Shown here one piece after another: positions 52,760 to 55,700 of a stretch of 64,000 bases of DNA (the stretch's first letter is position 1; each line of letters starts with the position of its first letter). The DNA lies in assembly GCA_964057225.1 (NCBI GenBank), contig OZ059896.1, positions 8,432,001-8,496,000 on the forward strand. The letters run 5' to 3'. The position numbers and the translations under genes were made by a program. The notes below the pieces were generated by a model. The model searched no databases. It saw only the letters and a list, made by a program, of their open reading frames with translations, and had not been told where the DNA came from. The stretch is from Auanema rhodensis (lineage: Eukaryota; Animalia; Nematoda).

Positions 52760-55700
52760 ATGTCGTCTTCTGCCGTAGGACCGGCATCATCTAATCGATT
52801 ATGGGTTGGGCCACTTCTTCTAATTCTTGTAATTGCACTGATTTATATATTTTCCTTAATGCCAAATGGCCCTACACCTCCTAGAGTTTGTTTTTTCTAA
52901 AAGTAATCGTCGATAACATTGGTATTTTTAGTTTCAAAGTCGATTTCCACATGAGGATGTTGATGAGTTCGAGTTTCATCATCGTCGATTAGAGGAATTA
53001 ACAAGAACGGAAGAAGAAGATGTTAGTAGTAACAAAGGTGCTTTTCTTCAATCTAAATCCAATTTTCTTATTTAATGCGTTTAGAACAGCTTTTACTTTC
53101 CGGCGGAATGTGCCTGAATGGCGGAGTTTATAATGAAACTTCAGATTCTTGTTTATGCGCACATAACTTTTCTGGAAATCGTTGTGAAGTTCTCAACACT
53201 AAACAGGTACACTAATAGTTCATTTTATTTCAAATAATCTAACTCTTCAAAATCAGATGTGCCTGAACAATGGATATTTTTCTCAAAAAATAGGCCGATG
53301 TCACTGTCCAATGCCTTGGACTGGACAGTTATGTCAACATCGTTGTACTGGATCTATTGGCAGAGTTAATCGAACAACATGTAAGTTCTTAATTTGCTCA
53401 ATGAACTTGATAAAAGGAAGATAGAATAGAAAACTTAAAAAAAACTTTTCTTCTAACAAGGGTTTCAATTGTTTTTTGAATTTTCAATTTTGAAAATGTT
53501 GCCAAATTAATAAATCTAATAATGTTGCTTCTAGGGACATGTCAATGCTCCAATCCACAAATGTTTGGACAGAACTGCGAACTAGTTTGTATAAATGGTG
53601 AAGTTGTTGATGATGATTGTCAATGTTTACCAGGTTTCATTGAAATGTTTAATTAGTTAAATATTAAAAATATATCTTAGGATATTATGGAAAATCCTGT
53701 GCAGCTTGTGATCCTAGCTACACGACTTCAGGAGAATGTGATGTAAACAATAAGCGAAGGTATTGTTTTACTAATTGTTTTCTTTTCTTTTTTTTTGTAC
53801 TTTAAGTTACTACATGTGGGTTTTAGCTGATAAGAACATAAAACAATCACATGTTCTAAACAAATTTTATTTATTTTACTTCAAAGTCAATGTAGCAAAA
53901 GCTGAAAATAATATAAAAATACTAGCTAAATTAGAAAAATAAATAAAAAATGTTTTGATGTTATGATCTGAGAATTCCATTTAGCCTTCCTTTCATGTTA
54001 TACTCAAAGACAAATATTTTTTTTTCAGAGGAGCTGTGAATTCTAGGCTTACACTAAGCGGTCTTTCTTTTTGTATGATAACAATTGGGTTACTGTGTGT
54101 AACAGCTCGGTAAGATAATATATTTTATAATTTTATGAAGGTATATTTGAAAATTTTGAAGTCGAAGGCGACAATCGATGGTTCCTCCTATGGATGATAC
54201 ATGGTATAGAGTATTTCAAACACATCCTAGACAGTATGTTTTCACATTGTCCACGTAGTTAGAATATAATAATTACAATATAATTGTTTTAAATAATAAT
54301 ATTTATCGAAATTTGAAAAAATTCAAATGTTATAGTCGATGTCGTCATGAGTTCACTTGTGGAAGCGCTTGGCTACCAAGAGATCGGGCTTTGTTCGTCT
54401 CTACTGGACGAGCATCTGTATCACATGGAGGTCGTCGAGGAAATGGGTATGTCATGTGGTTCTTTTGTAAATATTTTTCAATTTTAACATCAGGTATATA
54501 CATATACTAAATGAAAATGCTTGTGGGGGGTTGGGTGAATAGGAATATATAAAACTCGTTTAAACATCAGGTCTTGCCTAGTTCAACACCCGTATGCAAT
54601 ACGGCACAAGAACTGATAGGACTACATTGCGAAGTTTTCTCTTCGGCGATGATGATCCTTATGGTTGGTCCGTGTTACTTACAAGCGATTGATGATGCCA
54701 CAACCATCTGAGCCAATTTTTGAACTATTATAATATTAATTATATTAGAATTAGTAATTCTTTAAGTTTTTCCTTGAAGATAGTTAAAGCATGTGAAAAA
54801 GAACGGAGTTAATATCTGTCGAAAAGTATAGTATCAAACCCCCGTATGAAATACGGTGAAGTTATATTCCAGAATTTGAAGTGTAACTTGTAACGTTAAC
54901 AATGATGATCCTTATGGTTGGTCCGTGTTACTTACAAGCGATTGATGATGCTACAACCATCTGAGTTTTGTATTTTTGGAAAACAATGCATGTTTTGCAT
55001 GGTTGCATATTTTCATAAATGAGATATGTTTATTACCGTCGAATTGACTAAACTAAGATTATTATATAAAAGATATGGGCTCATAGCAGTTTTTCCTTAT
55101 AACCCATACCAAATACGGTTTGAAACATATCAACGTCATCTTAGAATTATTTGTATTCAAGCTATGATGATCCTTTTTGGTTGGTCCGTGTTACTTACAA
55201 GCGATTGATGATGCTACAACCATCTGAGCTATATTTTTGCATTTTTGAAAGTTTAGTATTTTTAAATAATACTTTCTAATATTTTAATTGATGAATACAT
55301 CTGTATGAAGCTGCAAAATCAAATTGTATTTTTTTTAACCAAGTCTTGTACTCAAAACCCGTATGATGTACGAGTATTTACAAAATTCTTCAAGTTGATC
55401 ACTCTTGTTCGTCAAGCAGTGATGATCCTTGGTTGGTCCGTGTTACTTACAAGCGAATGACGCTATTACAACCATCTGAGCAAAAAAACTATTCAATTGT
55501 GAATGATTGGTCAAAATTCTAAGGTTTATGTTTTAGATCTAGAGGTGCTAGGAGAATGACAACTCCCCCGCCCAGCTACACTTCAGTAGATAATATGACA
55601 GATGATGAGTCTCCACCAACTTATGAGGTAATCACTAATGTTCCAAAGAACATTTTTTTAAAACATTTTTCATTTTTCCAGGAGGCGTTGCGAACTTTGG

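What the first reader, a model, noticed from the sequence alone, without database searches (positions are those of the whole stretch)
54585..55481. Four tandem U18-like snoRNA cassettes in one intron, each with a palindromic element at a fixed 59-60 bp upstream
Seen: intron 54447-55536 of the EGF gene has four units (box C at 54649, 54902, 55164, 55419; period 253-262 bp). Only two blocks are conserved between units: the ~65-nt snoRNA and a C-CCGTAT-N3-ATACGG element starting 59, 60, 60 and 60 bp before box C. The spacer between them has diverged in sequence but not in length. Established: fixed-distance upstream elements are typical of SNAPc/PSE-type snRNA promoters, and some C. elegans intronic ncRNAs are transcribed independently from upstream motifs. 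From memory the C. elegans PSE/UM1 core is roughly AACCCG-N5-TGTCGG, which copy 4 (AACCCGTATGATGTACG) resembles. Inference: these are four autonomous nested transcription units with a lineage-specific palindromic PSE, not splicing-derived snoRNAs. Pol II is favoured because there is no shared TATA box, copy 3 has an internal T5 run, and copy 4 lacks a downstream T-run. An alternative is an RNA hairpin that directs endonucleolytic release from a polycistronic intron, but changes in copies 3 and 4 break the pairing without compensation, which favours a DNA element.
Basis: partly seen in the sequence, partly recalled or inferred. Interest (0 to 1): 0.8.

Follow-up and report, generated by a model that had tools for sequence, protein, structure and literature searches.

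The report
Four promoter-bearing U18 snoRNA genes
One intron of a nematode EGF-repeat gene holds four copies of the U18 ribosomal-RNA methylation guide, each behind the same promoter box that this worm uses for its spliceosomal RNA genes. They are therefore very probably self-transcribed mini-genes, an arrangement already known from C. elegans.

Summary
Intron 54446-55535 (+) holds four units with a period of 252-263 bp. Each unit has a SNORD18-like box C/D snoRNA and a CCCGTAT-N3-ATACGG-type element 50-51 nt before UGAUGA. The spacer between them has drifted to random identity (0.29-0.30) but has kept its length.

The element is this species' snRNA proximal sequence element (PSE). U1, U2, U4, U5, U6 and SL2 genes carry it, with TACG at -43 to -46 in the Pol II genes. 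At least eight other C/D snoRNA families carry it too. A matrix built only from snRNA promoters ranks the four intronic elements as the top four of 127,954 positions in the window.

The geometry and the lack of a TATA box fit the Pol II type, not the U6 type. The palindrome is incidental, because most PSEs here are not palindromic.

No RNA 5' ends could be examined, so autonomous transcription is inferred and a splicing-derived contribution is not excluded.

PSE/UM1-driven intronic snoRNAs are established in C. elegans, so this is a new member of a known kind. This scan has already noted similar promoter-bearing snoRNA arrays elsewhere in the same genome.

A shared AWUUUUGA element just after box D is an unexplained extra.

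The parts
54446..55535 (+). Host intron (GT..AG) of an expressed gene with EGF-like repeats. It contains all four units in the sense orientation.
   Evidence: Spliced RNA contigs in four runs join 54445 to 55536. Exon depth is 130-190 and intron contigs have depth 3-6. Upstream exons give weak EGF-family Pfam hits.
54584..54607 (+). Unit 1 PSE (core ACCCGTATGCAATACGG, 54588-54604)
   Evidence: snRNA-derived PWM score 25.9 bits, the best of 127,954 window positions. It matches the genome-wide PSE pattern.
54644..54715 (+). U18-like snoRNA 1. Predicted start 54644-54646, box C 54650-54655, guide GGTCCGTGTT 54667-54676, D'-like CTTA 54678-54681, box D 54708-54711, terminal stem GGC/GCC.
   Evidence: RF00093 at 30.5 bits, E 0.0022. 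Guide duplex with the LSU rDNA sequence at -21.9 kcal/mol. Start predicted from the TACG+44 to +46 rule of the snRNA genes.
54715..54724 (+). Downstream AATTTTTGAA element of unit 1
   Evidence: Shared by 6 of 9 independent PSE-snoRNA families.
54836..54859 (+). Unit 2 PSE (CCCCGTATGAAATACGG)
   Evidence: PWM 21.5 bits, second best in the window.
54896..54968 (+). U18-like snoRNA 2. Box C 54903-54908, box D 54961-54964, terminal stem AAC/GTT, which is compensatory relative to unit 1.
   Evidence: RF00093 at 36.3 bits, E 7.8e-5. Sequence.
54971..54981 (+). Downstream TATTTTTGGAA element of unit 2
55098..55121 (+). Unit 3 PSE (ACCCATACCAAATACGG; not palindromic)
   Evidence: PWM 15.7 bits, fourth best in the window. 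It matches the genome pattern.
55158..55231 (+). U18-like snoRNA 3. Box C 55165-55170, internal T5 at 55174-55178, box D 55224-55227, terminal stem AGC/GCT.
   Evidence: RF00093 at 36.0 bits, E 9.4e-5.
55240..55251 (+). Downstream CATTTTTGAAAG element of unit 3
55353..55376 (+). Unit 4 PSE (ACCCGTATGATGTACGA; weakened 3' half)
   Evidence: PWM 17.6 bits, third best in the window.
55413..55483 (+). U18-like snoRNA 4. Box C 55420-55425, degenerate C' box, box D 55476-55479, terminal stem of only 2 bp. It ends 56 nt before the 3' splice site and has no downstream T-run element.
   Evidence: RF00093 at 29.3 bits, E 0.0043..

Best explanation
Each unit of about 255 bp is a self-contained SNAPc-type small-RNA gene nested, in the sense orientation, in an intron of an expressed EGF-repeat gene.

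Proposed mechanism: the bipartite element (ACCC[G/A]TA-N5-TACGG, about -60 to -40) is this nematode's snRNA proximal sequence element. It binds SNAPc (inferred). With no TATA box, it directs RNA polymerase II to start 44-46 nt after the TACG half-site. That is 4-7 nt before box C, at the foot of the snoRNA's terminal stem. The primary transcript therefore already has the mature 5' end, presumably capped and then trimethylated.

The short transcript ends just beyond box D, perhaps at or near the shared AWUUUUGA element, and is trimmed to the snoRNP boundary. The product is the U18-type guide that directs 2'-O-methylation of the A in GAAAC-A-CGG of large-subunit rRNA.

Shown here: the anatomy, the identity of the element with the snRNA promoters, the matching geometry, and purifying selection on the element and its distance. 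Inferred: SNAPc binding, Pol II, the cap and the termination mode. Units 1-3 look fully functional. Unit 4 looks weakened.
For: (1) U1, U2, U5 and U6 genes found with Rfam models carry the element with TACG at -43 to -45 (U1, U2, one U5), -48 (the other U5) and -53 (U6). U4 and SL2 carry it at -46.
(2) A PWM built from 10 snRNA PSEs ranks the four intronic elements first to fourth of 127,954 window positions, all on the + strand.
(3) The pattern ACCCRTANNNNNTACGG has 290 genome hits against 8 for the reversed control. Among the first 100 listed, about 17 of 18 loci outside the repeat family precede a small-RNA gene. These are U4, U1, eight C/D snoRNA families and five PSE+TATA loci.
(4) In 13 PSE-linked C/D snoRNA units the TACG-to-UGAUGA distance is 50-55 nt, and the predicted +1 falls at the terminal stem.
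(5) Spacer identity between units is at the random level while the PSE core is at 0.76 and the spacing is constant. This points to selection on the element and its distance after old duplications.
(6) Terminal-stem pairs changed on both sides: GGC/GCC, AAC/GTT, AGC/GCT. The copies are therefore maintained as RNAs.
(7) These are the only four U18 copies in the 181-Mb genome.
(8) There is no TATA-like box at TACG+20 to +29, where U6 and five other loci have one. A U6-like -53 geometry would place the start inside box C.
(9) Units with an internal T5 (unit 3, L087, L088) argue against Pol III.
(10) Precedent in C. elegans: PSE/UM1 is found at 54 of 161 ncRNA loci including 11 snoRNAs. Intronic UM1 loci are expressed independently of their hosts. 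UM1 start sites equal the mature 5' ends. Seven C/D snoRNAs carry trimethylguanosine caps (PMC2527325, PMC1474057, PMC2200864).
Against: There is no direct evidence of transcription from the elements. The only RNA data were assembled contigs of what look like mRNA libraries. These cannot show snoRNA ends or caps.

Those contigs do show low-level host pre-mRNA running from the exon through unit 1 and across units 2-4. Intron-derived snoRNA production is therefore physically possible.

Three of the four units have T4-T5 runs shortly after box D, which could also be read as Pol III terminators.

The snRNA genes' 3' flanks do not share the snoRNA downstream element, so the termination mechanism is unknown.

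SNORD18 scores are below Rfam's gathering threshold.
Confidence: 0.8

Rival explanations
1. Mixed or mainly intron-derived biogenesis. The snoRNAs are released from the spliced host intron by debranching and exonucleolytic trimming, as for U18 in yeast and vertebrates and for intronic snoRNA clusters in plants and flies. The PSEs would add only a minor or tissue-specific contribution.
For: The units lie in the sense orientation in an efficiently spliced intron of a well-expressed host. Intron contigs of depth 3-6 bridge the exon, the PSE and the snoRNA. Unit 4 ends 56 nt before the 3' splice site, a typical place for a splicing-dependent snoRNA. From general knowledge, U18 is intron-encoded in other eukaryotes. 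Many fungal U18 hits sit just after a gtatgt 5' splice-site-like sequence.
Against: It does not explain why the PSE and its exact distance were conserved in all four units while the neighbouring sequence drifted to random. It also does not explain why the same element at the same distance precedes many other snoRNA genes, snRNA genes and an SL2 gene. In C. elegans, intronic UM1 loci are uncoupled from host expression (PMC1474057).
Confidence: 0.13
2. Pol III type-3 genes. The PSE recruits SNAPc and RNA polymerase III, as at U6, and transcripts end at the T4-T5 run after box D.
For: Units 1-3 and several other PSE-snoRNAs have a TTTT(T)G run 4-25 nt after box D. U6 in this genome uses the same PSE.
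Against: There is no TATA-like box at TACG+20 to +29, unlike U6 and loci L052, L054, L062, L063 and L070. The U6 spacing of -53 would start transcription inside box C, whereas the snoRNA spacing matches the Pol II snRNAs. T5 runs occur inside unit 3, L087 and L088. Unit 4 and the ceN22 units have A-runs, not T-runs, after box D.
Confidence: 0.05
3. RNA hairpin signal. The palindrome is transcribed as part of the intron and forms a stem-loop that directs endonucleolytic release of each snoRNA from a polycistronic precursor.
For: Units 1 and 2 can form a 6-bp stem with a 3-nt loop.
Against: The hairpins are weak (-5.1 and -5.4 kcal/mol). The stem is lost in unit 3 and reduced in unit 4 without compensation. 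The same element lies upstream of the transcription start at U1, U2, U4, U5, U6 and SL2 genes, where it is not in the RNA. Most copies there are not palindromic, for example CACCCATAACAGATACGG.
Confidence: 0.02

Closest known systems
C. elegans PSE/UM1-type ncRNA loci, including intronic C/D snoRNAs (Deng et al. 2006 as cited in PMC2527325; He et al. 2006 PMC1474057; Li et al. 2008 PMC2527325)
   Same: A bipartite PSE (PSEA and PSEB halves) lies about 60 bp upstream and is TATA-less. [quoted passage not shown] The start site coincides with the mature 5' end. Expression is independent of the host.
   Different: The sequence of the element differs in this species, especially the 3' half, TACGG. 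Here four paralogous units sit in tandem in one intron, whereas 71% of C. elegans snoRNAs are single-copy (PMC3342880). Nothing has been tested experimentally here.
CeR-2/U8-like and U3 snoRNA genes of C. elegans; vertebrate U3, U8 and U13 genes
   Same: These are box C/D snoRNAs transcribed from snRNA-type promoters by Pol II with TMG caps (PMC2943600, PMC2200864).
   Different: Those are processing snoRNAs, which are independently transcribed in most animals. U18 is an ordinary methylation guide that is intron-processed in yeast and vertebrates (general knowledge).
SNORD18 (U18), Rfam RF00093
   Same: Box C, the GGUCCGUGUU guide, the internal helix and box D are all present. The guide pairs with the conserved LSU sequence AACACGGACC, and the target A lies 5 nt from the D' position.
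   Different: D' reads CUUA instead of CUGA. Scores are 29-36 bits against a gathering score of 41. The RNA has its own promoter instead of depending on the intron.
Intronic or polycistronic snoRNA clusters of plants and Drosophila
   Same: Several snoRNAs lie in one intron or one precursor.
   Different: Those clusters share one promoter and are cut out of a common precursor. Here every copy keeps its own promoter element at a fixed distance.

Membership tests
SNAPc/PSE-dependent Pol II small-RNA gene (nematode UM1 type) | Upstream element matching the species' own snRNA-gene PSE | tested here: met
   The snRNA-only PWM gives 25.9, 21.5, 17.6 and 15.7 bits, the top four sites of the window. 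The element is shared with U1, U2, U4, U5, U6 and SL2 genes.
SNAPc/PSE-dependent Pol II small-RNA gene (nematode UM1 type) | Fixed PSE-to-start distance as at Pol II snRNA genes | tested here: met
   TACG lies at -43 to -46 at U1, U2, U4, SL2 and one U5. At the units, TACG lies 50-51 nt before UGAUGA, which puts +1 4-7 nt before box C at the terminal stem. The 5' end itself is predicted, not mapped.
SNAPc/PSE-dependent Pol II small-RNA gene (nematode UM1 type) | No TATA box between the PSE and the start | tested here: met
   None of the four units has a TATA-like sequence at TACG+20 to +29, where U6 and five other loci have one.
SNAPc/PSE-dependent Pol II small-RNA gene (nematode UM1 type) | Capped (m7G/TMG) 5' end, SNPC-4 occupancy, and expression independent of the host | not testable with these tools
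   Only assembled contigs of mRNA-like libraries were available.
SNAPc/PSE-dependent Pol II small-RNA gene (nematode UM1 type) | snRNA-type 3' box | tested here: inconclusive
   The snoRNA units share AWTTTTGA after box D. The snRNA genes' 3' flanks show a different AAGAA-like pattern.
SNORD18 / U18 box C/D snoRNA | Boxes C and D with a terminal stem | tested here: met
   All four copies have UGAUGA and CUGA. The terminal stem is 3 bp with changes on both sides in units 1-3 and 2 bp in unit 4.
SNORD18 / U18 box C/D snoRNA | Guide complementary to the LSU rRNA site GAAACACGGACC, with the target A at the fifth position from D' | tested here: met
   The genome's rDNA reads GAAACACGGACCGAGGAG. The duplex GGUCCGUGUU/AACACGGACC, plus UCCUU/GAGGA, folds at about -22 kcal/mol. 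The register is the same as in fungal U18 (GUGUUA-CUGA). D' here is CUUA.
SNORD18 / U18 box C/D snoRNA | Rfam RF00093 score at or above the gathering cut-off | tested here: not met
   29.3-36.3 bits against 41. Even so, SNORD18 is the best family for every copy, with E 8e-5 to 4e-3. I call the RNA U18-type by guide and architecture, not by the curated threshold.
Splicing-dependent intronic snoRNA | Sense orientation in a spliced intron of an expressed host | tested here: met
   Spliced contigs in four runs.
Splicing-dependent intronic snoRNA | No promoter of its own, and one snoRNA per intron near the 3' splice site | tested here: not met
   Each of the four copies has a PSE. Only unit 4 lies near the 3' splice site, at 56 nt.
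Pol III type-3 (U6-like) gene | PSE plus a TATA-like box about 21 nt after TACG, with the start at about TACG+53 | tested here: not met
   There is no TATA. A start at +53 would fall inside box C.
UM2-type (tRNA-like leader) snoRNA gene of C. elegans | tRNA-like A/B-box leader upstream of the snoRNA | tested here: not met
   ARAGORN finds no tRNA-like gene in 54300-55700.

The most novel reading that the evidence does not exclude
The AWUUUUGA element 4-25 nt after box D may be a dedicated 3'-end signal of SNAPc-driven guide snoRNA genes in this nematode. It is Sm-site-like (RAU4-5GR), is shared by the U18 units and five other unrelated PSE-snoRNA families, and is absent from the snRNA genes' flanks. 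One possibility is an Sm/Lsm- or La-type binding site on a short 3'-extended precursor that couples termination, cap hypermethylation and trimming. That would be a snoRNA biogenesis route not described for animal methylation guides.
Probability: 0.15. Interest if true: 0.6.

Novelty: new member of a known kind. Interest (0 to 1): 0.3.

Why it matters
It gives a clean, sequence-level definition of this nematode's SNAPc promoter element (ACCC[A/G]TA-N5-TACGG). It also gives two spacing rules: TACG at about -44 without a TATA box for Pol II genes, and at about -53 with a TATA-like box at U6, the one Pol III-type gene whose start could be placed. These rules can be used to annotate small-RNA genes across the genome.

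It shows U18, a textbook intron-processed guide in yeast and vertebrates, as a set of autonomous genes that still sit inside an intron. A cassette of promoter plus RNA about 255 bp long can duplicate on its own. That offers a simple explanation for why this genome is rich in tandem snoRNA arrays while C. elegans snoRNAs are mostly single-copy.

The mechanism itself is already established in C. elegans, so the finding extends rather than changes current understanding.

Tried and rejected
- Rfam at gathering thresholds over the whole window found nothing. The snoRNAs appear only with the E-value threshold.
- Tandem Repeats Finder does not see the array, because the spacers have diverged.
- The RNA runs were assembled contigs only and probably poly(A) libraries. 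They confirm the intron and host expression but cannot show snoRNA ends, strand or caps. Contig ends inside the snoRNA bodies are assembly breaks at repeated words, not RNA ends.
- A metagenome scan for U18 with the GTGTTAC guide returned mostly fungal intronic U18 genes and chance bacterial hits. No close nematode relative was found, so conservation of the array in related species could not be tested.
- My first rRNA pattern (RAACACGGACCAAGG) found nothing, because this species' rDNA reads ACCGAGG.
- The C. elegans PSE consensus could not be quoted from a held paper. Deng et al. 2006 is not held.
- The next-best PWM hits in the window (40803 on the - strand, 23618 on the + strand) lie in coding-looking sequence and lack TACGG. 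I take them as chance matches.
- The RNA-hairpin, tRNA-leader (UM2) and Pol III readings were considered and rejected, as set out under the rival explanations.
- I did not run the large protein searches. The host gene was only scanned exon by exon against Pfam, and the joined spliced model was not built or searched.
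Full report
**What is there**

The stretch 54446-55535 on the + strand is an intron. Spliced RNA contigs from four runs of one study join 54445 to 55536 across a GT..AG gap of 1090 bases. The flanking exons have contig depths of 130-190. The upstream exons give weak EGF-family Pfam matches. The last exons encode PPxY-like motifs. I scanned the exons one by one by reference and did not build or search the joined model.

Inside the intron, repeat finding and alignment show four units spaced 252-263 bp apart. Each unit holds a box C/D RNA of about 72 nt. Its best Rfam match is SNORD18, at 29.3-36.3 bits and E 8e-5 to 4e-3, which is below the gathering score of 41. Each unit also holds an element of the form CCCGTAT-N3-ATACGG. 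Its TACG half-site lies 50, 51, 51 and 51 nt before UGAUGA.

Mean pairwise identity between units is 0.76 for the 17-nt core of the element and 0.93-1.0 for the snoRNA. It is only 0.29-0.30 for the spacer and 0.30-0.36 for the downstream flank, against 0.28 expected from composition. The duplications are old enough that only selected parts remain alike.

**The RNAs are real U18-type guides**

All copies keep UGAUGA, the guide GGUCCGUGUU, an internal helix (UGGUUG/CAACCA) and CUGA. The 3-bp terminal stem differs between units by changes on both sides: GGC/GCC in unit 1, AAC/GUU in unit 2 and AGC/GCU in unit 3. Unit 4 keeps only 2 bp and has a degenerate C' box.

This genome's rDNA reads GAAACACGGACCGAGGAG, with about 660 hits to the 15-base core allowing one mismatch. 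The guide pairs with AACACGGACC at about -22 kcal/mol. This puts the A of GAAAC-A-CGG five positions from the D' site, the same register as in fungal U18 genes. D' reads CUUA rather than CUGA.

A DNA search of the whole 181-Mb assembly finds these four copies and no others. The array is therefore the species' only detectable source of U18.

**The upstream element is the species' snRNA promoter element**

I located U1, U2, U6 and U5 with Rfam models and read their upstream regions. All carry the same bipartite element:
- U1: CACCCATAnCAGATACGG
- U2: CACGCGTATGAAATACGG and CACTCGTAACAAGTACGA
- U5: CACGCATACAACATACGG
- U6: CACGGGTATGAACTACGG

The TACG half-site lies at -43 to -45 in U1, U2 and one U5 family, and at -53 in U6.

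The exact palindromic motif has only five hits in the genome. Two are units 1 and 2 of this array. Two precede tandem ceN22 C/D snoRNA genes. One precedes an SL2 spliced-leader RNA gene (RF00199, 52.6 bits) with TACG at -46.

A weight matrix built from ten snRNA-gene elements alone was scanned over both strands of the 64-kb window. It ranks the four intronic elements first to fourth of 127,954 positions, at 25.9, 21.5, 17.6 and 15.7 bits. The next hits lack TACGG and lie in coding-looking sequence.

The degenerate pattern ACCCRTANNNNNTACGG has 290 genome hits against 8 for the reversed control. Most of the excess is one dispersed repeat family and tandem arrays. Of about 18 other loci among the first 100 listed, about 17 stand in front of a small-RNA gene at the right distance. 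They are:
- U4 and two U1 genes
- eight box C/D snoRNA families (sn3060, ceN30-like, sn2429-like and others)
- five loci that also have a TATA-like box

**Which polymerase**

In 13 PSE-linked C/D snoRNA units, TACG lies 50-55 nt before UGAUGA. TACG+44 falls at the first bases of the terminal stem. This is the geometry of the Pol II snRNA genes.

U6 has the element 9 nt further upstream and a TTATGTAAG box 21 nt after TACG. Five other loci have CTATATAG-like boxes at that same place. None of the four units has anything TATA-like there. A U6-type start would fall inside box C.

T5 runs occur inside unit 3 and inside two unrelated PSE-snoRNAs, L087 and L088. Unit 4 and the ceN22 units are followed by A-runs rather than T-runs. 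Pol II is therefore the better reading. No tRNA-like leader of the C. elegans UM2 kind is present.

**DNA element or RNA hairpin**

As RNA, the elements of units 1 and 2 form only a 6-bp stem with a 3-nt loop (-5.1 and -5.4 kcal/mol). Unit 3 loses this fold and unit 4 weakens it, without compensation.

At snRNA and SL2 genes the element lies upstream of the start site, and most copies there are not palindromic. It is neither a feature of the promoter nor an RNA signal.

**What remains inferred**

No run with raw reads or small-RNA libraries was available. The contigs show host mRNA plus low-depth (3-6) intron pieces. One piece runs from the exon through the first element into snoRNA 1, and others span units 2-4. 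Their ends fall inside the repeated snoRNA body and are assembly breaks.

Host pre-mRNA therefore does traverse the units, and some U18 could come from the spliced intron. Unit 4 ends 56 nt before the 3' splice site, has the weakest element and lacks the downstream element. It is the copy best placed for that route.

SNAPc binding, the cap and the mode of termination are inferred from the C. elegans precedent.

**Comparison with what is known**

In C. elegans the PSE is the core of upstream motif 1 (UM1). UM1 is found at 54 of 161 small ncRNA loci, including 23 snRNAs and 11 snoRNAs, and most of these loci are TATA-less and yield capped transcripts (PMC2527325). Both PSE halves are needed for activity, and the start site equals the mature 5' end (PMC2527325). 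Intronic UM1 loci are expressed far above their host genes and uncorrelated with them (PMC1474057). Twenty-eight of 32 predicted Pol II ncRNAs, including seven C/D snoRNAs, carry trimethylguanosine caps (PMC2200864). SNAPc motifs have been predicted across nematodes, with a conserved 5' half and a divergent 3' half (PMC6436959).

The present locus fits this class feature by feature, so I rate it a new member of a known kind. The particular points are the species-specific element, the fourfold tandem arrangement inside one intron, and the fact that the RNA is U18, which from general knowledge is intron-processed in yeast and vertebrates.

Tandem promoter-bearing cassettes are common in this genome by my own calls:
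- five sn3060 units, period 271
- two ceN22 units, period 648
- long arrays of U6 (period 226), U5 (371), U1 (727) and U2 (about 2465)

Earlier notes of this scan describe further promoter-bearing snoRNA arrays on other DNA of the same genome. This contrasts with C. elegans, where 71% of snoRNAs are single-copy. It fits the published argument that a snoRNA without its own promoter duplicates poorly (PMC3342880).

**An extra observation**

TTTTG[A/G], in the context AWTTTTGA, lies 4-25 nt after box D in units 1-3 and in five other unrelated PSE-snoRNA families. That is 6 of 9 independent families, against 4.2% of control CTGA sites in the window. The binomial P is about 4e-7, for a pattern defined after seeing the data.

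The U1, U2 and U5 3' flanks do not have it. The same letters form the Sm site inside U4.

It could be a 3'-end signal, a short T-run, or an Sm/Lsm/La-type site on a 3'-extended precursor. I could not distinguish these.

**Verdict**

Interest is modest.

Noticed in passing
window 54715-54724, 54971-54981, 55240-55251; also L050, L053, L059, L087, L089: An AWTTTTGA element (Sm-site-like or 3'-box-like) lies 4-25 nt after box D in 6 of 9 independent PSE-linked C/D snoRNA families. Only 4.2% of control CTGA sites have it. It is absent from U1, U2 and U5 3' flanks.
   Followed up: partly
G000 C1:18483821(-)/18498264(+), C1:18794873(-)/18809322(+), C3:9452445(-)/9466925(+) and many more (loci L055-L069, L080-L083, L086, L090-L093): Most of the 290 PSE-pattern hits belong to a repeat, ccattgattaACCC[A/G]TAA..G.TACGGtgaaca, followed by AT-rich satellite-like sequence. 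The hits often occur as inverted pairs about 14.4 kb apart. This may mark the ends of a large mobile element that happens to carry, or mimics, a PSE.
   Followed up: no
G000 C1:6375156-6386113 (U6), C8:10427543-10529686 (U5), C3:15862280-16077301 (U1), C1:10958341-11283156 (U2): The spliceosomal snRNA genes lie in very long head-to-tail arrays, with periods of 226, about 371, 727 and about 2465 bp. Each search listed at least 42-48 copies.
   Followed up: no
L098-L100 (G000 C8 rDNA arrays, C4:576415): The large-subunit rDNA reads ACACGGACCGAGGAG, where I expected the widely conserved ...ACCAAGGAG (from memory). The U18 guide keeps a U opposite this G.
   Followed up: partly
L050 (G000 C1:5787397-5790413): There are five tandem sn3060 C/D snoRNA genes (RF01153, 54-55 bits) with a period of about 271 bp. 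At least the copy I examined lies behind a PSE.
   Followed up: partly
L052, L054, L062, L063, L070-L079: These loci have a PSE plus a TATA-like box 20-22 nt after TACG, followed by unidentified structured RNAs. L062 and L063 lie near ceN36-1-like H/ACA matches. L070-L079 form an array that ends in T7. They are candidate Pol III SNAPc genes.
   Followed up: no
L108 (metagenome contig Ga0157364_1007485), 4807-5617: Three tandem U18 genes with a period of about 385-400 bp occur in an AT-rich (30% GC) eukaryotic contig. Each is preceded by a conserved upstream block. U18 arrays have therefore arisen elsewhere too.
   Followed up: no
window 55413-55535: Unit 4 is the most degenerate copy. Its PSE 3' half is TACGA, its C' box is UGACGC and its terminal stem has 2 bp. 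It is also the only copy at a typical splicing-dependent distance, 56 nt from the 3' splice site.
   Followed up: partly
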